A DNA stretch of 64,000 bases from sequence record OQ603353.1, one strand, 5' to 3'. The position numbers were made by a program, and so were the translations under genes. Below the pieces are notes generated by a model. The model made no database searches, was not told the DNA's origin, and was given only the letters and a program-made list of their open reading frames with translations. Of this stretch, positions 18,805-42,409 are shown piece after piece (the stretch's first letter is position 1; each line of letters begins with the position of its first letter).

Positions 18805-19259
18805 TGCCATTTTGGCATCATCTGGACAACTACCGGAGTTTAGGGCAGTAAAGACCAGTATTTTCGTGCGAACACCTTGCAGACCCCTAGGGCTTCCCCT
18901 TTGAACGAGTGGAGGCCCTTCTTTTTGACCGAAATATGACTGATTGACCATCTGAATGACCGGAGTTGCCATTTTGGCACCTTATAGTAGAGGCCGAAAG
19001 AAGATTTTCTTCTCGGACCTCGGGCATCCCCTCATGCGTTGCCAAAATGGCACCGTCGGAGTGTCGGAATACACCCGAAAATGGCCCTTGACGTGGTACC
19101 CCACAGGGCGAAAAATTTAGGGGCTCCAGGATGCGTCTAGACACCCGATCCTTGCCAAGGATTACCGAGTTTGACGCAAGGATTTTTCAAATATTTTGAG
19201 TCTGAGCAGGCCAATCCTGTAAATATTGGGTGTGGGCAAAACAGGGTGCCAAAATGGCA
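18805..19259. repeat. cluster of four TGCCA-N3-TGGCA palindromes
   Basis: Copies at 18805-18817, 18967-18979, 19040-19052 and 19247-19259. Confidence 0.9.
19218..19225 (+). promoter_or_regulatory. candidate phage promoter TGTAAATA
   Basis: AATCCTGTAAATA upstream of the gene starting at 19347. Confidence 0.6.
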
Positions 19260-19346
19260 ACATCACTGCCCTGTCCGAACAATTTTTCGACGCAGAACGC
19301 ACCCTCCGTCCGAGGGTATGAATTTTTTGATGGCCGAGGGTCAAAA

Positions 19347-19877
19347 ATGACCAAAATTTCAGATATTTTACCCGACGACGCAGTGACCGAAGTGGTGCGA
19401 TCTGTTTTGCATCGCCTAGTGGTGGTCCGAGGCCTTTCCCTCTCCGAAATCATCAGGGACAACAGCGATATTGATCCTGACCTGTTCGGGGCACGACTTT
19501 TCTCAGTGATCGCCAACACCGAGGTGCAAATTCCTGTCTCACCGAAGGGGACCGAGGCAGCGCTCTCAGATTCAAGGGAGGACCGAGGGTACAAGAGGGG
19601 TGTGCGCGATTATGTGCTGTTCCGGCAGGACAAGAGTGGCAGGGGACGTCGGGAGTACCTGCACGTGAGCACGAATCTGTACGGGTGGCAGCAGTCCATA
19701 CCCCAGGATGCGCTGACTCACTTTGAGAGCGTAGAGGCGGTCCAGAATCGGGTGAACGGGATGCGACTCGATCCCGGCTACTTCTACTACACCGCTACCG
19801 CTGACGATCTGATAGACGAAGCGCTGCATAAGGTAGGGATAGTCCAGCATGCTATCGAGGTGGCCGAAGATGTTTAG
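19347..19877 (+). CDS. hypothetical protein
   Basis: Start trimmed to ATG 19347, past the motif block. Confidence 0.65.
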   Translation: MTKISDILPDDAVTEVVRSVLHRLVVVRGLSLSEIIRDNSDIDPDLFGARLFSVIANTEVQIPVSPKGTEAALSDSREDRGYKRGVRDYVLFRQDKSGRGRREYLHVSTNLYGWQQSIPQDALTHFESVEAVQNRVNGMRLDPGYFYYTATADDLIDEALHKVGIVQHAIEVAEDV

Positions 19878-19989
19878 GATCAGCCCAGCCCTGTATGGGG
19901 TCAAGGGATGGACCGAGTTGGCTTCCGCTGTGGGAGTGAGGAAACGTGGGAAGAGTAAATACACTAGGAAGAGGGGTAAGCGGAAATGA
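19870..19989 (+). CDS. 39-aa peptide with basic C-tail RKRGKSKYTRKRGKRK
   Basis: Translated by hand; ATGA overlap with the next gene; tail shared with 35594-35764. Confidence 0.7.
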   Translation: MFRISPALYGVKGWTELASAVGVRKRGKSKYTRKRGKRK

Positions 19990-20486
19990 AGTTGAGTGAC
20001 ATTCTGACTGAGCGGGATTTGATTGATCTGGCAGATGAGGTGTCGTCCGGTAACTACGAATCCCTGCTGGAGAAGCTGGGTGGGTATGAGTTTGAACCAC
20101 CCTATATGATCGGGGTAGCGGTAGAGGCACACAAGCTTGCAACGTGCGCTACCGAGGATGATCCTCCCCTGATATGGGATAGCGTGTCGCCGGAGTCGAT
20201 GCAGAAGTTAGGTGAGGGGCTGGCCGATAGTATGCACACCCTGCCCATGCAGCCGGGTACCACACGCAGGTTGCTAGGCAAGAGGGAGACAGACTGGAAC
20301 CTACGAGAGGCCGTGAGCTTGGCTGAGGCTCGGGTGTTCCGTAGCATGTCAGGACTCAGGGCAGTACGGGTTGATGAGAATGGTGATCCCCTGCGAGGAC
20401 CAGCATACGAGGCGGGCGAGTGGAGTCTGCGTAACTGGGAAGCAATCAAGCGTGACCAACAAGGAGAAAGCAATGCTACAGATTGA
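19986..20486 (+). CDS. hypothetical protein
   Basis: ORF track; coupled to the upstream peptide. Confidence 0.65.
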   Translation: MKLSDILTERDLIDLADEVSSGNYESLLEKLGGYEFEPPYMIGVAVEAHKLATCATEDDPPLIWDSVSPESMQKLGEGLADSMHTLPMQPGTTRRLLGKRETDWNLREAVSLAEARVFRSMSGLRAVRVDENGDPLRGPAYEAGEWSLRNWEAIKRDQQGESNATD

Positions 20487-22089
20487 CCGTGACCGATATG
20501 ATGAGGAAGCTTACGTGCCTCTGACGCTGGGTCAGATCATCAAGTGGGTGGAGACACAGCCGGAAGGGCAATGCTTCCATGGCCTGCACATGCCGCACAG
20601 CTACCGGGGCTACTACCAATGCTTGGCGTTCACCCCTAGCCCGGAGACTCTCAGCAAGGCAGAACTGCTGCATAGGCTTCGGGAAGGCGTAGGCGTATAC
20701 GACGGGTACAAGGGTGGTGTCTACCGCATGGGCCTCGACACCGAGTGCTACCTTGCTCGATACGGTGAGACGGGTGCGCCCATGTGCATGCGGTGGCTGG
20801 AGGATGAACTTCGGGTAACGGTGACGATGGTGCCGGAGAGTACAGCGCGCGCATCACGGGATGCCGTAGCCGATGTACAATCAGAGACAGCGGTGGAGGA
20901 AGCACGGGATGCGCGCGCTGTACCCGTAGACCCTGTGTCCACCCATCACGTGCATCGGGGTGCAGAGTCCCTGCCCTGCTACTGTGCACGCACGACAGAC
21001 CACCCGAACGGCCATGAGCTACTGTGGGAGAACCCCGCACCTCATGCTGCTGGCGCACCGTCGCCCTCTGCCCAAATGAAGATCAGTAGCCTGCCTGCTG
21101 ACAAGATGGACCCGGTGGATCACCTCGAATCCCTGCCTCCCGATATGCGTCTTGGTTCTGCTGACTATCTCGACTACCTTGACTCGGATACGCCGATGAC
21201 CACCAGTGATCCCAACGATTTGGTTGAACGTTGCAACAAGTACATGGCGCTGCGTGAGCGAGCCGAACAGGGCTTGTATGCGGTGGCGCGCGCTGCACAG
21301 GAAATGCGGGCGGTGTCTCAGCGTGGTAAGGACGCAGCCATTGTCCTTACCGAGACTCTCCCATCTGAGCAGATGCGTCAAAGCATTCGGTCTACCGTTG
21401 CGTTCTTCGCTGCACAGGAGGAGCGCATGACCGACATTCTCAACACCCTCTCGGCAGCGCGCGACAATGCTTTGCAGAAGGGTGACTGCCGGAGGATTGA
21501 TGGCCAGTGGTACGTCTGCACTGATCCCGATATGGCACGCTTCGTTACCTTTGATGGGATGGAGACTCCGTGCACCAACCTCAAGCGAGCGTATGATGCT
21601 CTTCGGTTCTACGTTGATGCCAGCGACACTGAGTTGGAGGAACGTGGGATTGATCGCGCTGAGGCACTGCGTCTTGCCCGTGATGCTGAGCGCGCGCTGC
21701 ACAACCACCTGAGCAAGGACCCAGATGACGTGTGGTGGGCCGAACCCCTGCCGCTTACTGCTATCGACCACGGTGCTGTCGTTCCCCTTGATACCGAATG
21801 GCAGGTGACCACCAATCCGGTGCCTGCCGATGCTGATCTTGGTGGCGAGGATGGTCCCGTGTGGGCTGTGATGCTGCCGCTGTCCATCGGGCCGAACGCC
21901 TACTACGATCCTTCCCCGCTGATCCAGCGTTTCAACCGAGGCTCCCACGTCCACTTCTTCCGTAAGGCTACGGCCACGAAGATCCGCGATCACTTCAACG
22001 CAATGGTGCGCACGAGCACCGAACAGCCGTTGGCCGAGATCGTTCACCACACCCTACAGCGACACGTACCCGGAGACAACAATGCTTGA
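20473..22089 (+). CDS. large mosaic hypothetical protein
   Basis: AAGGAG RBS; several unrelated-looking segments in one frame. Confidence 0.65.
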   Translation: MLQIDRDRYDEEAYVPLTLGQIIKWVETQPEGQCFHGLHMPHSYRGYYQCLAFTPSPETLSKAELLHRLREGVGVYDGYKGGVYRMGLDTECYLARYGETGAPMCMRWLEDELRVTVTMVPESTARASRDAVADVQSETAVEEARDARAVPVDPVSTHHVHRGAESLPCYCARTTDHPNGHELLWENPAPHAAGAPSPSAQMKISSLPADKMDPVDHLESLPPDMRLGSADYLDYLDSDTPMTTSDPNDLVERCNKYMALRERAEQGLYAVARAAQEMRAVSQRGKDAAIVLTETLPSEQMRQSIRSTVAFFAAQEERMTDILNTLSAARDNALQKGDCRRIDGQWYVCTDPDMARFVTFDGMETPCTNLKRAYDALRFYVDASDTELEERGIDRAEALRLARDAERALHNHLSKDPDDVWWAEPLPLTAIDHGAVVPLDTEWQVTTNPVPADADLGGEDGPVWAVMLPLSIGPNAYYDPSPLIQRFNRGSHVHFFRKATATKIRDHFNAMVRTSTEQPLAEIVHHTLQRHVPGDNNA

Positions 22090-22456
22090 CCTTAGCAATG
22101 ACGAACTGGCCAATGCCCTCAACAGCATCAACATGCAGAACTTCACTCTGTCCTCGGGCACAGAGGCGATGCAGGGTATCGCACGTGGACTCCGCGCTTT
22201 CAGCTCTACGCGTAGCGCCCTGCATGAAATGCACCTCACCACCGAAGCTCTGCACGCTGAGTGGACGAAGAAGCTGGAAGAGGCCAGCCATGAACAGCGC
22301 GCTCACGTACTGGCGATCCTGAGTTCCCTTGCACAACAGCGCGCGGGTCTGCACAAAGCACTGACCACCATCACGCACACCGAAGACATGATCCTCTCCA
22401 TCGCCACTGAACTGACGGGCGTTACCTTCCCCGCGGAGGCCGCAGAATGGGTCTGA
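22082..22456 (+). CDS. hypothetical coiled-coil protein
   Basis: Coupled ORF. Confidence 0.6.
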   Translation: MLDLSNDELANALNSINMQNFTLSSGTEAMQGIARGLRAFSSTRSALHEMHLTTEALHAEWTKKLEEASHEQRAHVLAILSSLAQQRAGLHKALTTITHTEDMILSIATELTGVTFPAEAAEWV

Positions 22457-22605
22457 GTGATTGCCCTAAGTGTTGGGACACGCCGTGTGGCTGCGGCCAC
22501 CAGTACGAACAGTGGACAGAAGAACGTCTGCGTGACCACATCAAGATGCTGGAAATGGTGCTTGCCAAGAAGCAGGCGCAACGATACAAAGGAGAGTCCA
22601 AGTGA
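22447..22605 (+). CDS. 52-aa Cys-rich protein (MGLSDCPKCWDTPCGCG...)
   Basis: Translated by hand; fills the gap, with GTGA overlap to the next gene. Confidence 0.65.
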   Translation: MGLSDCPKCWDTPCGCGHQYEQWTEERLRDHIKMLEMVLAKKQAQRYKGESK

Positions 22606-22874
22606 GCATGTATCGAGTTGTGTTGCAGCCTGTATGCAGGGCGTTCGGCGGTTGGGTGAGCGACCCGGATCGTGTTGAGCGCAGTCACCTGATGAACACC
22701 ACGGATACACTGGCGGTGTTGCAGTTTGACGACAACGGCGAATCCACCGGCAAAACGTTGTCCCAGACCTACCTGTTCCTGTGCCTCGGTGACATTGTGG
22801 AACTCCACGACGACCAAGGCAGCATCGGACACCACCGCGTACTGGACGTGATGGATGCGGAGGTAGCGCAATGA
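22602..22874 (+). CDS. hypothetical protein
   Basis: AAGGAG upstream. Confidence 0.6.
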   Translation: MSMYRVVLQPVCRAFGGWVSDPDRVERSHLMNTTDTLAVLQFDDNGESTGKTLSQTYLFLCLGDIVELHDDQGSIGHHRVLDVMDAEVAQ

Positions 22875-23033
22875 ACGTGGTACAACATCGGGAAGCTCAA
22901 CCACCATGAAGGCGAGGTCATCCTGCATCCCGGCACCAAGTACAAGGTATCGCACCACTCCCAGCACACTGATCCCGACAGCGGGCACATCTACCACGTG
23001 GTCCACCTGACCGCACACAGTCCGAAGCACTAA
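22875..23033 (+). pseudogene. start-less 3' remnant of a His-rich ADP-ribosyltransferase
   Basis: 52 codons TWYNIGKLNHHEGEVILHPGTKYKVSHH...; the ExE-VILH-G-K-KV segment matches the C-terminus of the ART at 25511. Confidence 0.7.
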
Positions 23034-23039
23034 TCCGAA

Positions 23040-23073
23040 GGGCCTATCCTGCTAACGTGGGGTAGGCCCTTTT
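23040..23073 (+). terminator. Rho-independent terminator
   Basis: GGGCCTATCC / GGGTAGGCCC stem plus TTTT. Confidence 0.8.
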
Positions 23074-23157
23074 GCATAGCCCGGCGATAGGTTCCAATTT
23101 CGTGCAAGTTGTCCCTGAATCGAACCTGAACGGCAGCTGAACGAAAATGAACAGTGG

Positions 23158-23186
23158 TTGACAGGGGGATAGGGTCCAGGCATAAT
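23158..23186 (+). promoter_or_regulatory. host sigma70-type promoter
   Basis: TTGACA (23158-63), 17-nt spacer, CATAAT (23181-86). Confidence 0.85.
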
Positions 23187-23268
23187 AGGCTTGTGGTAGG
23201 GAAACAAGGGCGTCAGCCCACCGGGACCCACCTATCGGAACCCCTAGTCAGATACCTCGGAGAATCTC

Positions 23269-25425: not shown

Positions 25426-25475
25426 GGAAATCCCATGCCCGACGTTACCCTGCACCTGTGCATCATCTGAGTCCT

Positions 25476-25485
25476 CTAATTTCAG
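25476..25485 (+). promoter_or_regulatory. candidate late promoter CTAATTTCAG
   Basis: Identical 10-mer 23-25 nt upstream of both His-rich genes. Confidence 0.55.
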
Positions 25486-25510
25486 GTGTCTTCCCCTAAG
25501 CAGAGAAACC

Positions 25511-26299: not shown

Positions 26300-26306
26300 G
26301 CGACTC

Positions 26307-26328
26307 AGGCATCCGAAAGGGTGCCTTT
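26307..26328 (+). terminator. Rho-independent terminator
   Basis: AGGCATCC-GAAA-GGGTGCCT plus TT. Confidence 0.7.
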
Positions 26329-26355
26329 GTCGTTTCTGCGCTCCCGAGTCGAGGG

Positions 26356-26379
26356 TGCCATTTTGGCATCCTGTAAATA
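26356..26379 (+). promoter_or_regulatory. TGCCA-TTT-TGGCA plus TGTAAATA composite site
   Basis: Palindrome 3 nt before the promoter motif, then a GGAGG RBS. Confidence 0.7.
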
Positions 26380-26492: not shown

Positions 26493-29400
26493 ATGAGCCC
26501 GAAGCTCTGCATCATGAACGACACCCACAACCAGCAGTCGGCTGTGATCGTCACCATCCAGAAAGACGCGATTGACCACACGATAAAGTTTGCCTACGAG
26601 GGTGATCCGGAGGGCCCTCGTTTCCGCCTGCCCACCGATCGGGGTAGCCTGATGCGCCTGCGTGACCTGATCGACAGCGTGCTTGATCCGAGCGTGGTTC
26701 CTGTCAACACCCTGCGTCAGCTGGCCGACCGTTGGGCAGCTGATCGTGACTACAAGGGCAGCCCGGTTGACGACATTCGCGCGCTGATTGGCGACACGCA
26801 AGATTCAGCACCCACCCTCGATCCCAAGTATCAGACGGCGTTGAAGTTTGCTATAGGTCATCTGGACATGAGTGACCAACCCGAGTACGGACAGCTGCAA
26901 GAACTGTTGGCCATGACCGAGCGTGGGAAAGGTGCCTCCAACCCGTGCACGCACTACGAGGACACCACGACCGACTGCCACGTAGGACCGAACTGCATCT
27001 GCCAACACAAGGATTAACCATGAAACTTTCCCCAGCTACGGCCGATGCAATAGCCGACTTTATTCGCCTGCCCATTTCCAGCACGTCCCCTTGGGACCGG
27101 GTATCCTTCCACATAAACAAGACGCTCAAGGCCACTGCCACGTGTGGCACTTCGGTGCTGACAATTGTCAGCACAGACGAACACGACTTTGCCCAGCAGT
27201 TGCGCTTGGTGGTCGCTGGTGCTCGCCGCATGCAGGTAAAGGAAGATGAGGAAGGCTGTGAGTGCAGGGACGGTGAAGGATGCTCCGTGTGCTCTACGTT
27301 GCCACTCGCCAGTGCTCGTAAGGCGTGCAAGCGCGTGCGTAGGACTCCCGAAGAGGCAGTGCTAGAGTGTGACGAGTGCGATGCCGATCCGGGTGTGCCA
27401 TGTGACTGTGGTACCGAGAATGAGGACAACGCCCCTCTAGGGGCCAACTAGAAGCGAGCGCCGTGATGATCGCATTGTTCAAGATCGTAGTGACCTTGGC
27501 GTTGATCGGGGAAGCACTATGTACCGCGTGGGCCGCGTGGAGTGATCGAGCTTTGATGGGACGCACGTACACAATCCTCACCATCATCGCCGTGTTGTTT
27601 GCGGCCCTCGCAGTAGGCGCCATTACCTACCGCACTCTACAGTTGGATGGGACACTATCATGAACCTTGACGCACTCAGCGTTCTCTTCATCGTGGTATT
27701 CGTCCTGCTGTCGTTTGTGTTCCTGTGGCTGGGACGTGGTGCATGGCGTGGTCGTGCGCGTACCGGCATCGCCCCTGTCTTCGCCAGCGCCTTTGGTTTC
27801 GGTGCCTGCTACACTGGCATCCTCCTTCTACTGGAAAGGCTATGACCAACAAGACCTTCAACATCAAGACCGAGTTCTTCACCAAGCTGTGCATCTACCT
27901 GATGCTAGGTGGCCTAGTTACTGGTGTGATCGAACGCCAGTACGCCAAGGAGTGCCCCGGTGAGGCCGGTGGCATGTTGACCATCACCGAAGCTGGGATC
28001 GTCAGCGCCACGTGGCCTGCGTTGCTAGGCGCTACGGTGTTCCATCTACTGACCAAAGATGGGGCCGACCGTCCCACCCAATGCAAGAGCGCCCGAGGTG
28101 ATCTATGACCTTCGATCTGACCATCCAACCAATCTCGGGTTGGAGCGAAGAAAGGAACTGCTGGCTGCACCCGCCTAGCTTCGCCAAGGTGTACGAAGCC
28201 AGCCTCGATCCCGACCACCTGTTGCTGCGTGTGGTTCCCCACCGTCACAGCCATAGCGTCAGCTACCTGAGCGTCAAGGCCCAACACTTGGCGGTCAACG
28301 ACGTGGTAGTGTGGCCGTTCCCTACCGGCGAGCAGTTCGGGATCATCCACCACGTACCGAGTGTGATCTAATGGAAGAAGCCGTTAGCATGCTATACACC
28401 CACATAGACTGTCCGTATTGTGACAACACCTTTGAGGTCGAAGGCGATCAACGAGGTTCCGTAGTCACGTGCGATCATTGCGATAAGGAAATGTTGGTAT
28501 GACCAACCACGAACAAGCAATCACCGACGCACTGTGGAGAGACAATGGACACAATTGACCTGAGCAAACCCACACGTGTGGTCACTGGGACCGTGACTAT
28601 GCCTGCACCTGCCTTCCAGCAGATTCCGAAGGCCAACACGTACACTCGACTGTACACCCCAGCTGAAACCCTCAGTGACATGGGCCAAGAGTTTGACGCG
28701 GCGCTGCATGCTGCTGTCCAACCACTGGTTGCCACCTTTATTGAGCGTGGGGCCGACAGTCACGACATGGAAGCGTTGGCCGTCGCTATGGTGACCAGCG
28801 AGATTGCCAGTCTGCGCATGGCCCGGCAGCTGCGACGCCGCAACGAAGAACGCGAGGCAGAGCGGTTGCAGTTGGAGACCGACATTTTGCAGTATGGGGA
28901 TCGTGCCTACGAACTGTGGTGCGAACACCAGCACAATGCAGTCAAGCGAGAGAACCGTCCAACTTACTGGAGCCAGCTGCACCCACAACACAAAGCCGCG
29001 TGGGTCATTCGGGCCAAGCGCGAGGCAGAACAGACAGGATGCGAGGAGGCCCACGATGAATGATTGCCCGCTGTGCAAAGCAACTCGACCCACCTGCCCA
29101 TACGGTCCCGTGGTGGCCACCAACGTGAAGACCGGCAAGAAGGTATGGCTGTCTAGCGCGTTGGTCCAGAAGATCATGAAGCTTGTGCCCAATAAGGAGG
29201 CTACCGCATGACCGTCAAGCTCACAGGATGGACCAAGGCCGATGGGCACACGTTGTGGATGACACAAGATGGCGAACCTGTGTTCCGTGAAGGCCACCTG
29301 CCTGACCTCGGCCCCAACAAAGCTGTGCATCTTACGGGCAAGATGCCGCTGCTGGACGATCCTCGCTACCTCAAATACCCAGGTTACGAATACCTTGAGG

Positions 29401-32914: not shown

Positions 32915-32924
32915 GGAAAGACTC

Positions 32925-33245: not shown

Positions 33246-33276
33246 AGAAGAGGCCCCAATTGGGGCCTCTTCTTTT
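33245..33276 (+). terminator. terminator (perfect 30-bp palindrome)
   Basis: AAGAAGAGGCCCCAATTGGGGCCTCTTCTT at 33245-33274, then TT. Confidence 0.8.
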
Positions 33277-33327
33277 GCCGGAAATAAGGAGAGATTGAAG
33301 ACCAGTTAAGGCCGAGGGCAAGCCTGC

Positions 33328-33337
33328 CTAATTTCAG
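33328..33337 (+). promoter_or_regulatory. candidate late promoter CTAATTTCAG
   Basis: Second copy, 23 nt before ATG 33361. Confidence 0.55.
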
Positions 33338-33360
33338 ATGACCTATGTAGAGCATCTAAT

Positions 33361-34116
33361 ATGCGCATCCTCAAAGCAACAAACAGTGCCGACAAGTCTA
33401 CGCCAGAGCCCAAGTATGAAGGCATTAGTGCTGGGCTGCGTCGCCTCGAACTTTCGTACATTGATGACACGGGTGTCGCCAAGCCAAACAGTGCGCCTAC
33501 TGTGCATCAGAAAAATCTGGAGAACGTGGCCTACAAGAATCCGAAGAAAGCATACAACAGCTTGGTCAAGGATTTGCGTGGGGCCAAGCATTTCAAAAAG
33601 GACTACGCGTACATCAAGGTGAAGAATACTGGTCATGGTGGCGGGCATCGTCTCCATATCATGCACGTTCCAACCCTGCACAAGGAACTGCACAGGATGC
33701 ACGCAGCGTACAAGTCCGGCGGGGAGACTGCTCTCAAGAAAGCTGTCCTCGAACACGCTAGATCAAAGTCGGGGCACGGACATGCAGGCCATGTCCGAAT
33801 GGTAGGCGATCAGGTTGGCATGGCAACGTTGCACAAGGAACACACAAAGAAGGGAGTGATGCACGATCTGTATCACCACCTTGTTACCAAGGAAGGCAAG
33901 AAGCTCCGAAGCTCCTCGCAATCCAAGGGCGCTCGGGCGCTGTGGACCAAGCTGTCCAAGCACAAGGACTTGCAGGTTCACGCGCTAGTCAACCACGGCG
34001 ACGGGGTAGTCAAGCTCAAGCCCGGATTGACACACGCATCTGGCCATAGCGTCTATGACAAGAAACACAAGCCCAACAAAGACGTGTACGCTCTGCACCT
34101 CAGCAAGAAGAAGTAG
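33361..34116 (+). CDS. His/Lys-rich protein with probable C-terminal GNAT-like domain
   Basis: LHKEHTKKGVMHDLYHHL...LRSSSQSKGARALWTKL resembles the rG.G.a..lY / S..QS.ga..lW pattern of phage GNATs; 25 of 251 residues are His. Confidence 0.6.
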   Translation: MRILKATNSADKSTPEPKYEGISAGLRRLELSYIDDTGVAKPNSAPTVHQKNLENVAYKNPKKAYNSLVKDLRGAKHFKKDYAYIKVKNTGHGGGHRLHIMHVPTLHKELHRMHAAYKSGGETALKKAVLEHARSKSGHGHAGHVRMVGDQVGMATLHKEHTKKGVMHDLYHHLVTKEGKKLRSSSQSKGARALWTKLSKHKDLQVHALVNHGDGVVKLKPGLTHASGHSVYDKKHKPNKDVYALHLSKKK

Positions 34117-34121
34117 CCCAG

Positions 34122-34153
34122 AAAGGCCCCTAGAAATAGGGGCCTTTTCTTTT
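34122..34153 (+). terminator. Rho-independent terminator
   Basis: AAAGGCCCCTA-GAAA-TAGGGGCCTTT plus T-tract. Confidence 0.85.
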
Positions 34154-34172
34154 GCCGGAAATAAGGATGGGT

Positions 34173-34197
34173 TGCCAAAATGGCAATCCTGTAAATA
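34173..34197 (+). promoter_or_regulatory. TGCCA-AAA-TGGCA plus TGTAAATA composite site
   Basis: Same architecture as 26356 and 41224. Confidence 0.7.
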
Positions 34198-34217: not shown

Positions 34218-35594
34218 ATGATCCCAGACTTTGACCTGTCCAAAGCAGTGCGCCAAACCAAGTTCGTGGGCCCCAACTCGAAGACAGGTAACTGCACTGA
34301 GGCGGCTATTGCCACCCTGCTGCAAATTCCCCTAAGCGCCGTTCCCGAATTCAATCGTAGCGGAGACGACGCATCTGACTTTTGGGAGAGCGTTGAAAGC
34401 TTCTTGGTAGAGCACGGGCTCTACATCAAGTACACCACCAAGCACAAACAAGGTGTGTATCTCGTAAGCGGCCCTACGGTAAGGGGCCGGGGTCACCACA
34501 CTGTCGTCTACAAGGATGGACAGTTGGCGTGGGACCCGCATCCCTCCGACGCAGGCGTCACCGAAGACGTGTGGTGCCTACACCTTCAAGACACGGATCC
34601 ATACGCATGAGTACCGACTGGAGTAAAGCAATGGTTATTGACTGGGAACTGCTTGCCCTTCGTATGCTTGCAGCCAACCAACTTGGCATCCGCATTGAGC
34701 AAAGCGACGGTCATCGTTGGATCATCGAAGACCTGTGTTCTGAATTCTGCCTGCACCTGTTCGGGGAGCCTGTACCCCTCAACGTGGTGGACCCTGAGCG
34801 TGAAGCCTACCAAAAGGTATACGGTTCCTATAGCGCTGCCCTCGATTTGATTGACGAACGGTTAGTTGCCAAGGGCCACAAGATTCTGGCAGAGCAATTC
34901 GATCACATCAATTACCACAACGACCTGTCAAACATCTTCGGAGACGGCGTGCAATGATTTTCAATGAGGATGAACTCAACCGAATAGCCGATCAGCTTGT
35001 GGGCAAGACCGCTGAGATTTGGGATGCACGTACGATACGCGAAGTAGCCCGAATAGGCGAAGTTCCCTTCTACCTGAAAGGCACCGTGGAGCAAATGACT
35101 GTAAGCGCTCACGTAGGCAACATTGTCGCACGTGACGAACAGGACCAACCCATCTACCTGACGATCAAGGGCTGCATTTGCTGGGAGGGTCGATACACTC
35201 TGCGCGCCGACCTGAACTACGAACCGTACATGGGCTCTGTGGGAGCCGTCCCTGTTGACATTGAATGGAACCAACCATGAGCAAGATCAAATTCCCGCAG
35301 GGCATGCGGGCCTATCGTCCACCGATGCACGCACCCCGACACGCCGTTACGGCACTGACCCTCGATGTTGAGGAATTCATTGCATTCCTACGCGAGCAGA
35401 AGTCCGACGTGGTACGCCTCAACGTGTTGGCATCCAAGGGCTCGGGTCATCATTACGTCTGTGTCAACGAGTGGCGACCGGGCAACCCTGTGCAGGAAGA
35501 GGCACGTGCGAAGCGTGCGCCTAAGCCGCAGCCGGATCATCATGATTACGAGGATCACAGCGTTCCACTCAATGACGAGGATATTCCTTTCTGA
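34218..35594 (+). other. four hypothetical genes (34218-34610, 34607-34957, 34954-35280, 35277-35594)
   Basis: AAGGAGG RBS and ATGA coupling; the first has NC..A and GHH..V, a peptidase-like Cys/His pattern (weak). Confidence 0.62.
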
Positions 35595-35764: not shown

Positions 35765-38211
35765 GCAAGACCCTGTTGACCCAGCACGCTGAGGCTCATA
35801 CCAACCTGACCATGTTTGGTGCGATCCAGTCCCTGTGCGAAAGCGGTTGCTTCTACGGTGGACGGGTCCACCCGGCACTGGACAAGATCATCAAGATTTG
35901 CAAGGCCGAGCAGCGCAAAGAACTCAAGATCATGGACAAGGCTGCGGAGAAGCTGAAATGAAATTCGATCTACTGACCGCGTATACGATGTTCGACCTTG
36001 CAGGTTTCAAGGTCACCAGCATCACTGAGATTCCGAACGACTATTGGCCTCGCACCTCCCTGTACGAACAGCTGCGAGCCGAAAGTCCTTGGTTCGTCGT
36101 AGGCACTGACTTCGGTGGTGTTCGCATCGGTTGGCGCAAGCGCGTTATCTCGATTGAGTGGGATAGCGCTATGCACAGCGGCATCATCACCGAGGACGAC
36201 ACCACCAAGGACCCGCATATGGTTCACGCGTGGAGTCGCGCTGATGCAGTGAAGTACCTTAGCAACCTTCGGGAGGCAGCGTATGCAGCCAAGAGCCGCA
36301 GGCCCACCCAAGTACAGGTAGAATCCAATGAATCTATGTGAGCTTCTGCATCGACCGTTGTTCATGCCCAAGGACGCAATCAAGTGTAGCTACTGCGGCT
36401 ACTACAACATGCCCAATACGGAACGCTGCCTTGGCTTCCTGTGTGGTGCCAACCTGCGCCCTACCGGCGGCGGATTCGTGGAGTTCTAATGACTAGCGCG
36501 CCTGAAACCACAAGCGTTACAGCCCGTATCGCACAGTCCATCCGTGAGCAGATCGGTACGGACTTGCCTACGATCACTCTGATGAATGGACAGATCATCG
36601 ACATTCAAGAACTGGCGCGTGCTATCGCAGCGCGTCTCGGACCTCCCAAGCCATGAACACATACATCTACCGACCGTACATCCAAGGCCCCGGCACTCAC
36701 ATGCTGACGGTTGCGACAGATAGGCAGTCTGCCGTAGTCAACATTGTGCGCAACCTCAAGCACTATTTCCCCGATGACGTTGCCAAGTTCAAACCCGAAG
36801 CCCTGACTTCTATGGTCAACGGGCAAACGTCCATCCTCCTCCTGAATGATACCGCTGTCATCCTGCCGCCTGATAGCACCGTGTCGATTGGAGTTTGACG
36901 TGAGCTACTCAGTGTTGTTCCGGCCGCAGCGTGGCGACTTTCAAACTAGCTACGCTGAGACTGTGCGAGTACGTAACACCCCCGAGGGTATTGCTGCACA
37001 CCTGACTCAGATACTCGGTCAGGTGGTGGGCCCTTCGCAAATCACATTCGAGGATGCAGGCTTTGACAAGCGCCTCGGTACCAACAATCAATACGTTCTT
37101 CTCGACGGCCAATGCGTAGGCTACGTTTGGGAAGGCGACGAAATCTAAAGGACAGACCATGCTTCCGCAAGCCCGTTACCTCGTTGCTTTCAGCAACTGC
37201 TACTTCCACTTCACGGACACAATGATGCCGCTGCGCATTCTTGAAAACTGCGACGTGGCCATTCAGATCAAGCCGAACATGGAGCTAACTCTCATCAAGG
37301 TTCGTACCGACACTGCGCTGCTCAAGCTGCTGAATGCCGAGACTTCAAACGAAACCAAAGACCTGTACGACGGCAAGCCTCCGAGAGAAGACAAGCGTGA
37401 TTGGCGCGCGTTCAAGATCGAGTGCATCAACAACAGTCCCATCCCGGCTCCACTCATCTAAGGGGCCGCGTATGGGAACTTACATTGGTGGATGCGCCGA
37501 GCGAAAGACTGACTCGGGCTGGGAGGTTGTAGAGATTCACCTGCCGTGGCTGCTGGACTATCAGTGCTACGAATACTTCGGATGGCTTGGTGGGGTGCGC
37601 AACTATGCAGCTGTGTCCTCGGTTGCCGAACAACGTGGCCTACCTGCCGACGTATCCAAGGAGGCTGAGGTTGAGTACGATCACTGCTACGATGCTAGTT
37701 CCCCTAGTTATGTCACCGTGGAGGAACTGCTTGCCATCGACTATCAGCAGTTGGTTGAGAACCGTAGATGGGATGGCACGCATCTACGCTCAGGGACTTT
37801 AACGTGCGAGCCGGGTCAGGGCGAGACGATGACCCTTGAAGAATACCTCGGTCCGGAGCGCGTGGCCGAGATTCGTTCCCTGCCAGATAAGGGTATCGAC
37901 CGACTTGTGTTTTGGTTTAGCTGAGGATCGTCATGTTCGAGAAAATCAAACGCTACTTGTTCGTCCAGTTGATGCGGTACTTCATCCACGACAAGATCAA
38001 GTGGCAGGCAATCTTGCACGTCTACTGGATTGAATACCGCAAGCGTTACACCGAAGAGACGACGCCCACTTCCCTTGACAGCATCTACACTGTCTTGAAG
38101 GAGGCATCCGAACGTGAGTTGGCTGCCAGCGCACGTGATCGCAAGATTCGGGAACTCAATCAGCAAGTAGCACAAATCACTAGCGAGAACTATCACGACT
38201 ATTGGGACTAA
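35761..38211 (+). other. run of small hypothetical genes (35761-35961, 35958-36341, zinc-ribbon ORF ~36328-36490, 36489-36656, 36653-36898, 36900-37148, 37159-37461, 37472-37924, 37933-38211)
   Basis: Coupled ORFs. Confidence 0.6.
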
Positions 38212-38214
38212 ACC

Positions 38215-38598
38215 ATGAAAGAGTTAGGCCATAGCGGCATAATGATTTATCCGCTTACTCCGTTGCAGTCCGAAGCCTCAAAGATTCTCGCGGAAGAATG
38301 CGTAGAGCTTGCGAAGGAATGCAGCAAGATCGAGCGTTGCGGTTTGCCATTCATTGCGACTGGTGAAGCACTCACGTTCAAGGAAAAGTTCACTGAGGAA
38401 ATTGCGGACGTCCTCACGCTGATCGACGAGGCAATCGCTGCCGGGTTGGTAGATCGCCAGCGCCTTGTCCAAGTGCTTGACAACAAGCCCGCACGTCTGC
38501 GCAAGTGGACGACCCACCTTGGCTACGCTCCAGTGCGTTACGCCAATCCCCTGCTCCTCAACTTCAATTCTTCTGACGACACTTCGGATCGAGACTGA
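38215..38598 (+). CDS. MazG-like nucleotide pyrophosphohydrolase
   Basis: ILAEECVELAKECSK...EEIADVL (ExxE/ExxD). Confidence 0.75.
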   Translation: MKELGHSGIMIYPLTPLQSEASKILAEECVELAKECSKIERCGLPFIATGEALTFKEKFTEEIADVLTLIDEAIAAGLVDRQRLVQVLDNKPARLRKWTTHLGYAPVRYANPLLLNFNSSDDTSDRD

Positions 38599-38600
38599 CT

Positions 38601-40289
38601 ATGACCATTCGCTATATCCACCTGCGCTCCCCGGTAATCCCGTACCTGCAAGAAACGGGTGAACACTTCGGCGGCATCACTGTGGCCTACGAACTGTGGA
38701 CCACCAAGGACCCGACCGGCGTCTCCCACCTGTTCGCCAACGTAGCACTGGCCCTGTGTGATCACCGGGATCGTTACAACAAGGTGGAAGGCCGTCGCAT
38801 TGCTTCCGAGCGCCTGCGCAATCGTCTCTCGGTGTCTCCGCTGCTCGCGTTCACCACGCACCTTGGCTTCGCTGCTATGGAAGAGGAAGTTGGCCACGGC
38901 GTCGGTTCCTATATGGACCGCTTCTACGCCAAGCTGACGCGCGACGCTTCGGGTGGCATCGACGTGAACGAACGCGAAATCAAGGTCACCAAGATTCTGA
39001 CCCAAGTTGCCATCCAGCATGGCGAGGTTTGCTTCTACTCTTGGGGAGGCAAGTAATCGAAAGGGGGCCTTCGGGCCCCATTCCATTGAGGGACATACCA
39101 TGCAATATACAGGCGGCTGCGGACCTATGCTAATCAGTAGCAGTACAAAGTGGCTCACCAAGATTCACCTCTCCCAAGAGGACGGCAAATGGAAGGCCAC
39201 ATGGAAACCAACTAACGGGTACCACCCAAAGGACTGCCCTTCTTTCGTGTTCAGCGCTGCGACTCCTGTGGAAGCCTATGCTACTACAATGGCCGAAGCG
39301 TCCAACTACCTGCTGTGTATTTTCTGGCAACCGCCTCGGACATACAACGGAAGGTACAAGCCTGCGCATCTTGCACTGCTCGATGCAATCACGCTCCAAG
39401 CTAAGAGGGATCGCAATGGGAATTGAAAACGGCGTAGGACTGAGTTACAACGACTACCGAGCAATGAACGGTCGCCAGATTGTGTGGCGATTGGTAAAGG
39501 AAGCGAACGGTAGCTTCACTCACATTCTGGAATTCAACGGCAAGCGCGGCATCTTCCCCAGCGATGATCCCGAGGATATTGAGAAGCATTCCAAGTACCT
39601 CAACGCAGAGTCCTACCTGCGCGCTATTAACGTGGTCAGCAATGGCGACGGTACTGCAACCGGGACAGGCCATCTGATCGTGGCAGAAGACTACTTCACC
39701 TTTGCGCTTGCGATGGTTCCGATGGTTGTTCGCCAAGGCAGGCACAAGGGCAAGAATCTCCCGATTAAGAAACAAGTGTGCGTGTTCAAGGCAGGCAAGA
39801 TCGCCGACTACCTACATTCCGAGGCCACGGTATGAGCAAGATCGACGTACAGGAAATCATGCGCGAAGTGCGTGAGAACCTAGACCGACTGCAAGCGTGC
39901 AAGGGCCACAAGTGGCCGAAGATCGAACGTGAGAAACGTTCGCCGTTGGAGAAGTACACGTGCACTGAATGCAAGGGCAAGGTCGGCTTCACTGAAATGC
40001 TCTACTACGTGCGTGGTGCTGTGCACTACGGCGGTGTAGACCCCAACACAATCTCCCCGGAGTGGCCGTTCAAATGAGTGATAGCTTTGTAGTGCAACAG
40101 AAGCTGGGAACGAAGTCGCTGTATTTCACCACCATTGATCGAGGCGGTGCCGTGTGGTCCGAAGGTGATCTGGCCAAGGCCACTCAGTTCGCTTCGGAAA
40201 TCAATGCACAGGACATTGCTGAATTCATCGCCGAACGTGCCGTTGGAACTTGGGAGGTAGTGACGTATGCGACCGCCGCAGCCGCGTGA
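38601..40289 (+). other. hypothetical genes (38601-39056, 39100-39426, 39416-39835, 39832-40077, 40074-40289)
   Basis: Coupled ORFs. Confidence 0.6.
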
Positions 40290-40809
40290 AGTTTGGACCC
40301 ACACAAACGGGAGGGACTACACTGTCCTGCTGATCGCTAACCAGCATTCAGAGAATCCGAAGTACCCTCCGACCGTCGTGTACGAAGGTGACAACGGTAG
40401 GGTGTGGAGTCGCCCGCTTAGTGATTGGCATCGCTCCATGACGTACAAGGCGGAGTGTCTGCACAATTGGGTAGATGCGCGCAACAAGTACATCGACTCG
40501 GGTGAGGTATGCCTGACCTGTTTCAAGATGCGTGCTGGCAACCCGACTACGGAAGGATTCAAGATCAACTGGATCGACCCGGAATTGTCCTTGGTGCATG
40601 CCAAGCCTATAACGGTTATGCCGCAGGACGTAAAGAAGACCCTCAATGATTGGATCGAAAAGGAGTACCCTGTTCTATCCAACATGCGCCGCTTTGTGGG
40701 CAGGTATGAAGAAGGTCAAGGCTACCCGGTGGTGCTCGACGGCTGCATGATGGGGCGAGTGGCTGTTGCTTACTTTGATCGTGACCCTTCGGACTATCTC
40801 TATGACTAA
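40267..40809 (+). CDS. DUF1653-like N-terminal domain protein
   Basis: WTHTNGRDYTVLLIAN...TVVYEG...VWSRPLSDW. Confidence 0.55.
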   Translation: MRPPQPREVWTHTNGRDYTVLLIANQHSENPKYPPTVVYEGDNGRVWSRPLSDWHRSMTYKAECLHNWVDARNKYIDSGEVCLTCFKMRAGNPTTEGFKINWIDPELSLVHAKPITVMPQDVKKTLNDWIEKEYPVLSNMRRFVGRYEEGQGYPVVLDGCMMGRVAVAYFDRDPSDYLYD

Positions 40810-41221
40810 GCCCGGCATCTTTCTAATCCAATGCGAGCTAGAAGGAAGGCTCCTCATTCAACTTCTCAGTGAAGGTGGCTCCCAGCAAATCGCCCGTGCC
40901 AATTTTTACGCAGACGACCGTGGCGCGTGGGTGTTCAATGTGCTGGTGCATGAGCCGTTCCGTAGGATGAAGATGGGTAGGATGCTGCTAGAAGGAATCG
41001 CAACCTACCTCCGTGATCCTGACAAGACTATCAGCTTCAAGGTAGACCACGACAACGAGGTGGCGCTGAAATTCTACAGCAGCTTGGGGTTCAAGCGAAC
41101 CGGAGTATTGCAGAATTCAAGAGGCGCTGGGCTGGACGAAGTAGTCATGGAGGCTCGGATACGAAACACCACGGTGAGCCCACCAACCATGAACAAGTGG
41201 ACTTATCAAATCACGGTATAG
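40802..41221 (+). CDS. GNAT acetyltransferase
   Basis: NVLVHEPFRRMKMGRMLL...VDHDNEVALKFYSSLGF. Confidence 0.88.
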   Translation: MTKPGIFLIQCELEGRLLIQLLSEGGSQQIARANFYADDRGAWVFNVLVHEPFRRMKMGRMLLEGIATYLRDPDKTISFKVDHDNEVALKFYSSLGFKRTGVLQNSRGAGLDEVVMEARIRNTTVSPPTMNKWTYQITV

Positions 41222-41223
41222 AG

Positions 41224-41248
41224 TGCCATTTTGGCAACCCTGTAAATA
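41224..41248 (+). promoter_or_regulatory. TGCCA-TTT-TGGCA plus TGTAAATA composite site
   Basis: Directly upstream of the winged-helix regulator gene. Confidence 0.7.
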
Positions 41249-41275
41249 TCAGATACCTAACACACTAGGACTGTC

Positions 41276-41845
41276 ATGACTGCCCCGATCAGGCTATACG
41301 ACCCTTTCGTCGTCACCTACTACGTGCAGGACAAGGAAGCTTTGATGGCCAACCATCGGTCCCTGTTCTCCGTTGATGAAGTAAACAAGATGCGCTTCCC
41401 GATCGTCATCGGTATGGATGACGTGCCTCAGTGGATGAATGCACAGGAGTACCGGGACCATCTAGGCGTCCGCATGCAGGCGCTCAATCGCTACCTGTTC
41501 CCTCCGGACTTTAACCTAGATCGCATCCTCTATGTAACCTTGGGCGATCAGCAGGTACCGATTCAGCTTACGCACGCTGAGAGCGTGTTGTTGCATTGCC
41601 TGATGGAAGCTAATCGGGTAGTGAGTAACGGCGAACTCTTGAATTTGCTGGAGTCGCTGCCCACACGCAATGGTAAGGAGCGGAATTACACCAAGAGCAC
41701 GCGCTCTAGTCTAGTGCACGTCATGACGTATCGGATACGGTCGAAGGTGCGCCGCATCGGTGGCCCTACGCTGCTTGAGGTTATGCACGGTGTAGGCTGC
41801 CGTTACGTAGGTGGTTCAAACTTCTCTATGGCACAGGTGAATTGA
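41276..41845 (+). CDS. OmpR/PhoB-type winged-helix DNA-binding protein without receiver domain
   Basis: IQLTHAESVLLHCLM...VVSNGELL...VHVMTYRIRSKV...EVMHGVGCRY. Confidence 0.78.
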   Translation: MTAPIRLYDPFVVTYYVQDKEALMANHRSLFSVDEVNKMRFPIVIGMDDVPQWMNAQEYRDHLGVRMQALNRYLFPPDFNLDRILYVTLGDQQVPIQLTHAESVLLHCLMEANRVVSNGELLNLLESLPTRNGKERNYTKSTRSSLVHVMTYRIRSKVRRIGGPTLLEVMHGVGCRYVGGSNFSMAQVN

Positions 41846-41846
41846 A

Positions 41847-42365
41847 ATGAGCGATCCGATGACGGGCACCTTGCCCGCAGTAGAAGAACTGAAAGACGAT
41901 ATGGGCTTCAACAATGTTGGCCCGACCTTGAGCAGCAAGCTGTTTCAAGTGTGTGCACAAGAACTGCGTGAGTGGTATCAGAAGCGAGGTCACAAGACCT
42001 ACCCGGCTGACGCTCCGTTCCTGACACGCGAAAAGAAGATGCCGGCCAACACACGGCTGATTCTGATCTACCCATCCAAAGGCCGCTACGTTGTTCTGCG
42101 CCGCGATCCGGGCAACCTCACTCCGCCGACAGTCGAGTATTCGCTGGCGCGATTCGCAGTGGTGTCAGCAAAGGCACTCAAGAAACTCAACCCCGAGAGC
42201 ACATTTGTCGTAGCACGTGCCCTGCGTTCAGAATGCTGGTGGGAGTACCCTCACTATCCACGCAACGCACGTCGCAAGATTGCTCCACGCGACCTGAATC
42301 CCGTTGATCTGGCAGACTCTTACGCTGTCATCTTCACCACCGACCTTACCGCCAAGACGCCCTGA
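41847..42365 (+). CDS. hypothetical protein
   Basis: ORF track. Confidence 0.6.
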   Translation: MSDPMTGTLPAVEELKDDMGFNNVGPTLSSKLFQVCAQELREWYQKRGHKTYPADAPFLTREKKMPANTRLILIYPSKGRYVVLRRDPGNLTPPTVEYSLARFAVVSAKALKKLNPESTFVVARALRSECWWEYPHYPRNARRKIAPRDLNPVDLADSYAVIFTTDLTAKTP

Positions 42366-42371
42366 TTGCAT

Positions 42372-42409
42372 AGGGTGCCAAAATGGCAACGGTGCCAAAA
42401 TGGCACCCT
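42372..42409. repeat. tandem pair of TGCCA-AAA-TGGCA inside an AGGGTGCCA/TGGCACCCT inverted repeat
   Basis: Copies at 42376-42388 and 42393-42405. Confidence 0.88.

What the first reader, a model, noticed from the sequence alone, without database searches (positions are those of the whole stretch)
18805..42405. Nine copies of a 13-bp operator-like palindrome TGCCA-(AAA/TTT)-TGGCA, three docked on the phage promoter
Seen: copies at 18805, 18967, 19040, 19247, 26356, 34173, 41224, 42376 and 42393, all intergenic once starts are corrected, all with an A3/T3 centre. At 26356, 34173 and 41224 it sits 3-4 nt upstream of TGTAAATA; four cluster in the candidate origin; two are tandem before the CYTH/HTH genes. 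Inference: a phage dimeric protein acting both as promoter activator/repressor (analogous to the T4 MotA box) and as origin/partition binder.
Basis: partly seen in the sequence, partly recalled or inferred. Interest (0 to 1): 0.65.

Follow-up and report, generated by a model that had tools for sequence, protein, structure and literature searches.

The report
Conserved operator palindrome of a jumbo phage
A giant Xanthomonas phage carries nine identical copies of a short mirror-image DNA word, unchanged even in a distant relative, that most likely serve as docking sites for one of the phage's own gene-switch proteins, which would control a 25-kb block of accessory genes; this is an ordinary kind of control, but newly seen in this phage lineage.

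Summary
The window is bases 1-64000 of Xanthomonas phage Ep026 (227 kb). TGCCA-AAA/TTT-TGGCA occurs nine times in the whole genome, with 0.006 copies expected. All nine are non-coding and lie between 18.8 and 42.4 kb.

A relative only 70-80% identical (Logan contig ERR6221067_1691) also has nine perfect copies. Seven are orthologous; the flanks are only about 42% identical. Spacings are kept: 3-4 nt to the promoter, 17 bp in the tandem, 161-162 and 73 bp in the cluster. At two orthologous sites the centre is flipped (AAA to TTT), so the unit is read as duplex DNA. With a G two bases outside each arm (34 of 36 half-sites), it is a 17-bp operator.

Best reading: the operator of a phage-encoded dimeric helix-turn-helix regulator, probably a repressor. 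It overlaps -30 to -18 of the phage's -10-only CCTGTAAATA promoters, lies downstream of a fourth promoter, and sits in tandem before an operon encoding two very conserved HTH proteins (43786, 42932).

The MotA analogy and the origin/partition role are not supported. No binding or transcription data exist.

Similar palindromes occur in unrelated phages and bacteria, but no protein is shared with Ep026.

The parts
18805..18817 (.). Operator copy 1 (TTT centre), first of the non-coding cluster
   Evidence: Intact in PhiXhv-12/-15/-16 and in environmental relatives. The orthologue in the distant relative has an AAA centre.
18967..18979 (.). Operator copy 2 (TTT); polymorphic
   Evidence: The left arm is replaced in PhiXhv-12/-16 and in run X1. 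The copy is present in Ep026, PhiXhv-15 and the distant relative.
19040..19052 (.). Operator copy 3 (AAA), 73 bp from copy 2
   Evidence: The orthologue in the distant relative has identical flanks but a TTT centre.
19214..19227 (+). Phage promoter ATCCTGTAAATAtt, heading the gene that starts at 19347
   Evidence: Kept as TGTAAATG in the distant relative.
19247..19259 (.). Operator copy 4 (AAA), 21 nt downstream of the 19218 promoter motif, about +15 to +27
   Evidence: Only a degenerate remnant is present in the distant relative.
18779..19346 (.). 568-bp non-coding hub holding copies 1-4, a terminator-like hairpin and a highly conserved block at about 19060-19225
   Evidence: about 100% identical in four phages while the upstream genes differ; blocks conserved in the distant relative.
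26356..26379 (+). Operator copy 5 (TTT), then tcc, then the TGTAAATA promoter. It follows a terminator-like hairpin and heads a small ORF (26399) and the gene at 26493
   Evidence: The orthologue is perfect in the distant relative.
34173..34197 (+). Operator copy 6 (AAA), then atcc, then the TGTAAATA promoter, heading the gene at 34218
   Evidence: The orthologue has a 3-nt spacer. The upstream cassette differs between Ep026 and the PhiXhv phages.
41224..41248 (+). Operator copy 7 (TTT), then accc, then the TGTAAATA promoter, heading the gene at 41276
   Evidence: The same 25 bp are identical in the distant relative while the flanks differ.
41276..41845 (+). 189-aa protein with a C-terminal OmpR/PhoB-type winged helix; weaker candidate binder
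   Evidence: Pfam Trans_reg_C E 1.7e-4, below cut-off. Atlas: 22 of 30 neighbours fall in the Trans_reg_C set. Only 33% identical to its orthologue.
42376..42405 (.). Tandem operator copies 8 and 9 (AAA, AAA), 17 bp centre to centre, ending 21 nt before ATG 42427
   Evidence: Same arrangement, spacing, orientation and distance to the ATG in the distant relative.
42427..42942 (+). CYTH-domain protein, first gene behind the tandem operators
   Evidence: Pfam CYTH E 1.7e-10.
42932..43339 (+). 135-aa orphan protein with an N-terminal helix-turn-helix read by eye; candidate binder
   Evidence: No Pfam or PDB hit. No relatives among 1.84 billion representatives apart from its own lineage. 81% identical to its orthologue, with a near-identical putative recognition helix. 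Low-confidence model shows helices at 10-17 and 21-29.
43786..44019 (+). 77-aa XRE/Cro-type HTH protein; best candidate binder
   Evidence: HTH_3 E 0.03. PDB 2auw putative DNA-binding protein E 1.2e-5. One of only two HTH_3-like hits in the whole phage. 87% identical to its orthologue, the most conserved protein of the neighbourhood.

Best explanation
The 13-mer is the core of a 17-bp operator, G-n-TGCCA-AAA-TGGCA-n-C. It is probably bound as duplex DNA by a symmetric dimer of a phage-encoded helix-turn-helix regulator. The most likely binder is the 77-aa XRE-type protein at 43786 or the 135-aa protein at 42932. Both are encoded in the operon directly behind the tandem operators.

The regulator would control the accessory-gene block at 19-44 kb, most likely as a repressor:
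- At three promoters the operator occupies about -30 to -18, just upstream of the phage's -10-only promoter CCTGTAAATA. That promoter is presumably read by host RNA polymerase with the phage's own sigma factor.
- At a fourth promoter the operator lies at about +15 to +27.
- The tandem pair sits 21 nt before the first gene of the regulator's own operon, which would give autoregulation.
- The three further copies in the 568-bp non-coding hub would be auxiliary sites, for looping or titration.

Shown here: the sites, their uniqueness, their conservation and their geometry. Inferred: protein binding, which protein binds, the sign of control and the position of the transcription start.
For: 1. Uniqueness. 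Nine exact copies are the only ones in 227 kb, all non-coding and all in 18.8-42.4 kb.

2. Conservation in a distant relative. A relative with 68-82% nucleotide identity in the alignable parts has nine perfect copies. Seven are orthologous, with arms 70/70 identical, against 117/280 (42%) in the 40 nt upstream, ungapped.

3. Conserved geometry. The spacer to TGTAAATA stays at 3-4 nt. The tandem stays at 17 bp and 21 nt before the ATG. The cluster spacings are 162/73 versus 161/73 bp.

4. Centre flips. The centre is AAA in one phage and TTT in the other at two orthologous sites whose flanks are unchanged there, and mixed centres never occur in 18 sites. The same duplex works in either orientation, as expected for a symmetric dimer on double-stranded DNA and not for an RNA hairpin.

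5. Longer symmetric site. G at position -2 in 34 of 36 half-sites extends the symmetric site to 17 bp.

6. Close relatives. Eight of nine sites are untouched in three phages about 97% identical. In environmental run X1 the three other copies of the cluster are untouched next to an 11-substitution patch.

7. Link to the promoter class. All four TGTAAATA promoters inside the block carry a site, and none of the 14 outside does.

8. Sign of control. Scored with a matrix trained on promoters without a site, these four cores rank 1, 4, 8 and 13 of 18. They are not weak, which fits repression better than activation.

9. Non-transcribed position. Terminator-like hairpins lie just upstream of the sites at 26356 and 34173, placing those sites in DNA that is probably not transcribed.

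10. Candidate binders. 43786 and 42932 are 87% and 81% conserved, against 29-77% for their neighbours, with near-identical HTH segments. 43786 matches HTH_3 and a PDB DNA-binding protein.

11. RNA polymerase. The phage encodes a sigma factor (phrog_17569, E 8.6e-50). No RNA polymerase was detected, although one of the two polymerase searches failed its own control.
Against: - There is no binding, transcript-start or expression data. The public runs that hold the phage are contigs only.
- The sign of regulation rests on geometry and on an assumed start site about 7 nt after TGTAAATA.
- Complete invariance of 18 sites is stricter than in most repressor regulons. It is more typical of parS or KorB-type sites, or of sites read by enzymes.
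- The fourth cluster site is not kept in the distant relative, and copy 2 is dispensable in some isolates.
- The HTH assignments are weak. 43786 is below the Pfam cut-off, 42932 is by eye only, and the structure models were poor or unmatched.
- A host factor cannot be excluded, because no Xanthomonas genome could be scanned.
- Two promoters outside the block (124990 minus strand, 216909) carry only the proximal half-site GTTTTGGCATCC at the same position. Part of the motif may therefore belong to the promoter itself.
Confidence: 0.62

Rival explanations
1. Activator site. The dimer bound at -30 to -18 recruits or remodels RNA polymerase at a subclass of phage promoters, as MotA, class II activators or phi29 p4 do. 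The other copies are enhancer-like or reservoir sites.
For: The position just upstream of a promoter that lacks a -35 element. Two further promoters carry the proximal half-site at the same position. The spacing to the promoter is conserved.
Against: The site is symmetric and occurs in both orientations. Only 3 of about 21 promoters have it upstream, and their cores are as strong as those of promoters without it. One copy lies downstream of a promoter, and the tandem pair has no TGTAAATA beside it. No MerR-family domain was found in the phage.
Confidence: 0.15
2. A host (Xanthomonas) transcription factor or nucleoid protein binds the sites, and the phage uses it to time the block.
For: The same palindrome type is used as a tandem operator in many unrelated bacteria and phages. 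No phage protein has been shown to bind.
Against: The sites frame the phage's own HTH genes in an autoregulation-like layout that is conserved in the relative. A 100% identical phage is recorded on an Erwinia host. No Xanthomonas regulator with this site is known to me, and no paper holds the 13-mer as an operator.
Confidence: 0.1
3. Replication-origin or partition (centromere) sites. The four-copy hub is the origin or a parS-like locus, and the same protein also silences promoters, as KorB does.
For: A cluster of 3-4 invariant copies in a 568-bp non-coding region that is itself highly conserved. The perfect invariance resembles parS or OB sites.
Against: No DnaA-box cluster, and only modest AT content, about 0.55 in the richest 150-bp stretch there. 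No GC-skew change at 19 kb. No ParB_N domain in the phage. The neighbouring genes have no replication-initiator signature. Five of the nine copies are dispersed in front of operons.
Confidence: 0.07
4. RNA- or single-strand-level hairpin: a processing site, a translational operator, or an N4-type hairpin promoter.
For: A 5-bp stem with a 3-nt loop. The tandem pair lies 21 nt before a start codon.
Against: Both loop orientations occur on one transcribed strand, and they flip between orthologues. The sites at 26356 and 34173 lie between a terminator-like hairpin and the next promoter. The stem is short. No giant virion RNA polymerase is present: the largest ORFs are an SNF2 helicase and PolA. 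There is no Rfam match.
Confidence: 0.04

Closest known systems
Lambdoid/434-type CI-Cro operators (XRE-family HTH dimers)
   Same: A palindrome of about 17 bp with an A/T centre that tolerates either orientation. Sites overlap promoters. There is a tandem pair in front of the regulator's own operon. The candidate binders are small HTH proteins.
   Different: No lysogeny module was noted in this lytic jumbo phage. The sites head at least four operons spread over 24 kb. The promoter is a phage-specific -10-only type. All copies are identical rather than graded in affinity. Membership of the protein family is only weakly supported.
Phage P1 C1 repressor with its many dispersed operators; IncP KorA/KorB global regulons (from my own knowledge)
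   Same: One invariant operator repeated about 10 times across a large replicon. Some copies lie on promoters, some downstream and some remote, giving one-protein control of many operons.
   Different: P1 operators are asymmetric and serve lysogeny. KorB is a ParB homologue, and no ParB_N domain is present here.
T4 MotA box of middle promoters
   Same: A phage-specific element upstream of the -10 region that replaces a -35 element.
   Different: The MotA box is an asymmetric 9-mer centred at -30. It is present at all middle promoters and is read by a monomer together with AsiA. Here the site is symmetric, sits at a minority of promoters, and also occurs away from promoters.
T4 late promoter TATAAATA read by gp55 (from my own knowledge)
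   Same: The partner promoter CCTGTAAATA is a -10-only octamer, 7 of 8 identical to TATAAATA. The phage encodes its own sigma factor.
   Different: This concerns the promoter, not the palindrome. Here the promoter also drives replication genes: an SNF2 helicase and PolA.

Membership tests
Phage repressor-operator system (XRE/Cro-CI type) | Palindromic operator of about 14-20 bp, conserved under selection | tested here: met
   The 17-bp symmetric site is perfect in 18 copies of two lineages about 25% diverged.
Phage repressor-operator system (XRE/Cro-CI type) | Operator overlaps or immediately flanks the core promoter | tested here: inconclusive
   The site lies 3-4 nt upstream of the conserved TGTAAATA motif at three sites and 21 nt downstream at one. 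Transcription starts are not mapped.
Phage repressor-operator system (XRE/Cro-CI type) | Adjacent gene encodes an XRE-type HTH protein | tested here: inconclusive
   43786: HTH_3 E 0.03, below cut-off, and PDB 2auw E 1.2e-5. 42932: HTH by eye only.
Phage repressor-operator system (XRE/Cro-CI type) | The protein binds the operator as a dimer | not testable with these tools
No protein-DNA tool was available.
T4 MotA-box middle promoters | Asymmetric box centred near -30 at every promoter of the class | tested here: not met
   The site is symmetric. Its centre is at about -24. It is present upstream at 3 of 18 exact TGTAAATA promoters, about 21 by weight-matrix scan.
ParB/KorB-type centromere or global operator | ParB_N-domain protein encoded by the replicon | tested here: not met
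   PF02195 search of the whole 227-kb record gave no match at E <= 1, and the controls gave matches.
MerR-type spacer operators | MerR-family HTH protein, and a -35 element with a 19-20 bp spacer | tested here: not met
   PF13411 gave no match. There is no conserved -35, and terminators abut several promoters.
Replication origin | Initiator-box cluster, AT-rich unwinding element, skew change | tested here: not met
   No DnaA-box cluster in 18.8-19.3 kb, and the AT maximum is only 0.55. The skew profile is flat there. Other initiator types were not tested.
N4-type hairpin promoters | Giant virion RNA polymerase, and a hairpin at a fixed distance before the transcribed genes | tested here: not met
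   The largest ORFs are 1662 aa (SNF2) and 1023 aa (PolA). Both orientations of the site occur.

The most novel reading that the evidence does not exclude
One phage regulator, through a single invariant 17-bp operator, switches a whole 25-kb plastic block of accessory genes (possibly host-takeover or anti-defence genes) as a unit. It would do so from a multi-site non-coding hub by looping. The same conserved operator-promoter units would double as the junctions at which gene cassettes are exchanged between phages. This would be a KorB-like global silencing system without a ParB fold in a lytic jumbo phage.
Probability: 0.15. Interest if true: 0.6.

Novelty: new member of a known kind. Interest (0 to 1): 0.42.

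Why it matters
No paper I found describes transcription control in this jumbo-phage lineage. The paper describing its close relatives mentions neither promoters nor RNA polymerase.

This analysis yields three concrete, testable parts. The first is a promoter class, CCTGTAAATA, together with a phage sigma factor. The second is a 17-bp operator with nine exact copies. The third is a set of three named candidate regulators.

The analysis also marks out a 25-kb regulon of accessory genes. In Ep026 these include an ADP-ribosyltransferase, GNAT acetyltransferases and a CYTH protein. The relative also carries Lar-like and TacA-like genes.

The perfect conservation in a relative about 25% diverged, with the centre flipped at two sites, makes a binding assay very likely to be informative. 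It is still an ordinary type of regulation, so the interest is moderate.

Tried and rejected
- Composite operator-plus-promoter pattern. Scans of IMG/VR and of JGI metagenomes returned only unrelated, low-GC chance hits. They gave no extra relatives.
- Tandem-palindrome scans. Scans of IMG/VR and of the species genomes found many loci. However, tblastn of all Ep026 ORFs against the viral loci found no shared regulator. An HMM built from the Firmicute HTH-nucleotidyltransferase proteins next to such sites hit nothing in Ep026. I conclude that the motif type recurs without homology.
- Word searches for 41276, 42932 and 43786, and the full-library search for 42932, found only the phage's own lineage. 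The single outside hit, P0004, is a repeat artefact.
- Structure models. 43786 folded alone gave pLDDT 83 in only one of five models and had no PDB fold match. 42932 gave pLDDT 61. Neither is used as evidence beyond secondary structure.
- Rfam found nothing in the window.
- Sigma-54 reading of TGGCA: rejected, because no TTGC lies at the right distance.
- Extended -10 reading of TGcCAAAAT inside the AAA-oriented copies: possible for the tandem site but untestable here.
- Public runs are contigs only, so they give no transcript starts.
Full report
**Identity of the window.** Megablast places the window at positions 1-64000 of Xanthomonas phage Ep026 (OQ603353.1; 227,420 bp, circular record, unannotated). 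A 100% identical Erwinia phage Ep032 exists, and three annotated phages, PhiXhv-12, -15 and -16, are about 96-97% identical. I fetched the rest of the genome and joined it for whole-genome scans. The paper describing the PhiXhv phages calls them a new lineage without relatives. It contains neither 'promoter' nor 'RNA polymerase'.

**The observation.**
- The pattern TGCCAWWWTGGCA matches exactly nine times, at the stated coordinates. None was found in shuffles.
- In the whole 227-kb genome these are the only copies. No copy has another 3-nt centre.
- Apart from coding low-complexity repeats, this word and the promoter word ATCCTGTAAATA are the most repeated 12-mers of the genome.
- All nine copies are the same duplex 13-mer in two orientations (5 AAA, 4 TTT).
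- With corrected starts, all nine are non-coding.

**The partner promoter.**
- TGTAAATA occurs 18 times genome-wide. Its strand switches with the direction of the coding strand, and most copies lie shortly before a ribosome-binding site and start codon, several just after a terminator-like hairpin.
- There is no conserved -35 element. A weight matrix finds about 21 such sites in all.
- They precede, among others, an SNF2 helicase and the PolA gene.
- No multisubunit polymerase domain was found. The search for a T7-type polymerase found nothing either, but its control found nothing anywhere, so it is uninformative.
- A 338-aa ORF at 225384-226397 is a phage sigma factor (phrog_17569, E 8.6e-50; weak Sigma70_r2 hits).
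- From my own knowledge, the octamer is 7 of 8 identical to the T4 late promoter TATAAATA. I infer a phage-sigma-dependent, -10-only promoter.

**Geometry of the nine sites.**
- At 26356, 34173 and 41224 the palindrome ends 3-4 nt before TGTAAATA. If transcription starts about 7 nt after the octamer, the site covers roughly -30 to -18.
- At 19247 the site lies 21 nt after the 19218 promoter octamer.
- Copies 42376 and 42393 are 17 bp apart and fill the 62-bp gap before the CYTH gene, where there is no TGTAAATA.
- Copies 18805, 18967 and 19040 lie further upstream in the 568-bp non-coding region.
- All four TGTAAATA promoters inside 19-42 kb carry a site. None of the other 14 does, although two (124990 minus strand, 216909) have the proximal half-site GTTTTGGCATCC at the same position.

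**Conservation in close relatives.**
- PhiXhv-15 has the same nine sites genome-wide.
- PhiXhv-12 and -16 have eight in the stretches I fetched. The left arm of the 18967 copy is replaced.
- 111 of the 117 palindrome positions are identical in all three relatives, against 87.7% of positions across 15-46 kb.
- In the contig of an environmental run, copies 18805, 19040 and 19247 are intact, although 11 substitutions cluster at 18845-18870. The 18967 arm is again replaced.
- Upstream of 34173, and of the hub, the neighbouring genes differ between phages. Homology resumes at the terminator or hub. This agrees with an earlier first-reader note that cassettes sit in front of these sites.

**The decisive comparison.** The 135-aa protein at 42932 has one relative, 81% identical, on a 69-kb Logan contig. 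I walked 47 kb of that contig. It is syntenic with Ep026 but only 68-82% identical where it can be aligned at all.
- It holds nine perfect copies of the 13-mer, all with an AAA or TTT centre:
  - three in the equivalent non-coding hub, spaced 161 and 73 bp (162 and 73 bp in Ep026);
  - four docked 3-4 nt before TGTAAATA, three of them orthologous to 26356, 34173 and 41224;
  - a tandem pair 17 bp apart that ends 21 nt before an ATG.
- Across the seven orthologous sites the arms are 70/70 identical. The 40 nt upstream are 117/280 identical.
- At the orthologues of 18805 and 19040 the centre is flipped between AAA and TTT. At 19040 the immediate flanks are otherwise unchanged.
- Position -2 outside each arm is G in 34 of 36 half-sites, so the symmetric unit is 17 bp.
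- These facts show purifying selection on a double-stranded, orientation-free site. That is what a symmetric protein dimer reads.

**Which protein.** Behind the 41224 operator-promoter lies a 189-aa protein with a weak OmpR/PhoB-type winged helix. Behind the tandem pair lie CYTH, the 135-aa protein (an XRE-like HTH segment read by eye), a Cys-rich 146-aa protein and a 77-aa protein. The 77-aa protein matches HTH_3 weakly and a solved putative DNA-binding protein (2auw, E 1.2e-5). It is one of only two HTH_3-like hits in the phage.

Between the two lineages these proteins are conserved as follows:

| Protein | Identity to orthologue |
|---|---|
| 77-aa (43786) | 87% |
| 135-aa (42932) | 81% |
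| Other neighbours | 29-77% |
| 189-aa winged helix (41276) | 33%, with changes in its recognition helix |

An invariant operator fits the two well-conserved HTH proteins better. This is inference only. The models were poor and the dimer prediction could not be run.

**Repressor or activator.**
- Scored with a matrix trained only on promoters without a site, the four site-bearing promoters rank 1, 4, 8 and 13 of 18. They are not the weak cores typical of activator-dependent promoters.
- One site lies downstream of a promoter, and the tandem pair sits in an intercistronic gap.
- Together these favour repression by promoter occlusion or roadblock, with feedback on the regulator's own operon and hub sites acting as auxiliary operators.
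- The spacings of 73 bp and 207 bp are close to whole numbers of helical turns (my own calculation).
- I put repression at about 0.6 given binding. Activation remains a live rival.

**Rejected or weak readings.**
- Origin or partition: no DnaA-box cluster, no strong AT-rich stretch, no skew change, no ParB_N domain, and no initiator signature in the neighbours.
- MerR-type operator: no MerR domain and no -35 element.
- N4-type hairpin promoter: no giant polymerase.
- RNA hairpin: both orientations occur on one strand, the centres flip, and some sites lie between a terminator and the next promoter.

**Wider occurrence of the word.**
- Tandem TGCCA-W3-TGGCA pairs are common elsewhere. In at least 68 loci from unrelated, uncultivated phage contigs (some over 200 kb) there are 161 pairs spaced 29 bp. 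Of these, 76 lie directly after a sigma-54-type promoter.
- In bacteria such pairs precede hsp20 and clpB genes in several phyla, and HTH-nucleotidyltransferase genes in Firmicutes.
- No protein links these to Ep026, and no paper holds the 13-mer as an operator.
- The motif type is therefore a recurrent operator solution. The Ep026 regulon is a new instance rather than a member of a described system.

**Verdict.** The most likely function is an operator for a phage HTH regulator controlling the 19-44 kb block (confidence 0.62). Novelty: a new member of a known kind. Interest is moderate.

Noticed in passing
L009-L128 (IMG/VR contigs, e.g. L018, L059, L086): Unrelated uncultivated phage contigs, some over 200 kb, carry dozens of paired palindromes cTGCCA-W3-TGGCAg spaced 29 bp centre to centre: 161 pairs in 68 loci. 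Of these, 76 begin 4-6 nt after a sigma-54-type TGGYAY-N5-TTGCW promoter. This looks like an undescribed promoter-operator cassette.
   Followed up: partly
L129-L248 (bacterial genomes, e.g. L129, L130, L132, L143, L157): Tandem (C)TGCCA-W3-TGGCA(G) sites lie directly upstream of hsp20 (14 loci) and clpB (8 loci) in Gemmatimonadota/Longimicrobiales, Planctomycetota and Bacteroidota. This may be an uncharacterised heat-shock operator. The same sites also lie upstream of HTH_3-nucleotidyltransferase genes in Firmicutes.
   Followed up: partly
L004:11384-12400 (Ep026 225384-226400): A 338-aa phage sigma factor (phrog_17569, E 8.6e-50). It is the likely reader of the CCTGTAAATA promoters, whose octamer is 7 of 8 identical to the T4 late promoter.
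   Followed up: partly
window 19060-19225: A non-coding block of about 165 bp, nearly identical even in the relative that is 70-80% identical overall. It contains the perfect palindrome ATCCTTG-C-CAAGGAT (19148) and two ACACCCGA repeats 70 bp apart. Its function is unknown: a regulatory DNA site or a small RNA.
   Followed up: partly
window 18000-18780 and 33260-34170: Gene content immediately upstream of the hub and of the 34173 operator differs between otherwise near-identical phages. Homology resumes at the terminator or operator unit, so the conserved regulatory units coincide with mosaic junctions.
   Followed up: partly
window 23113-23141; 25470-25490; 33320-33340: There is a sigma-70-like TTGACA-17-CATAAT promoter inside the block. 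The word CTAATTTCAG is shared upstream of the ADP-ribosyltransferase (25511) and GNAT (33361) cassettes, suggesting further promoter classes.
   Followed up: no
window 40900-43400 (public runs X1-X16): About half of the sampled 31-mers of this stretch (shares 0.43-0.54) are held by 16 runs, including drinking water, honey, wastewater and sediment samples and several organism-labelled runs. The four I laid were 95-99% identical, so the phage species is widespread. Runs X4 and X5 lack the 18.0-20.8 kb segment.
   Followed up: partly
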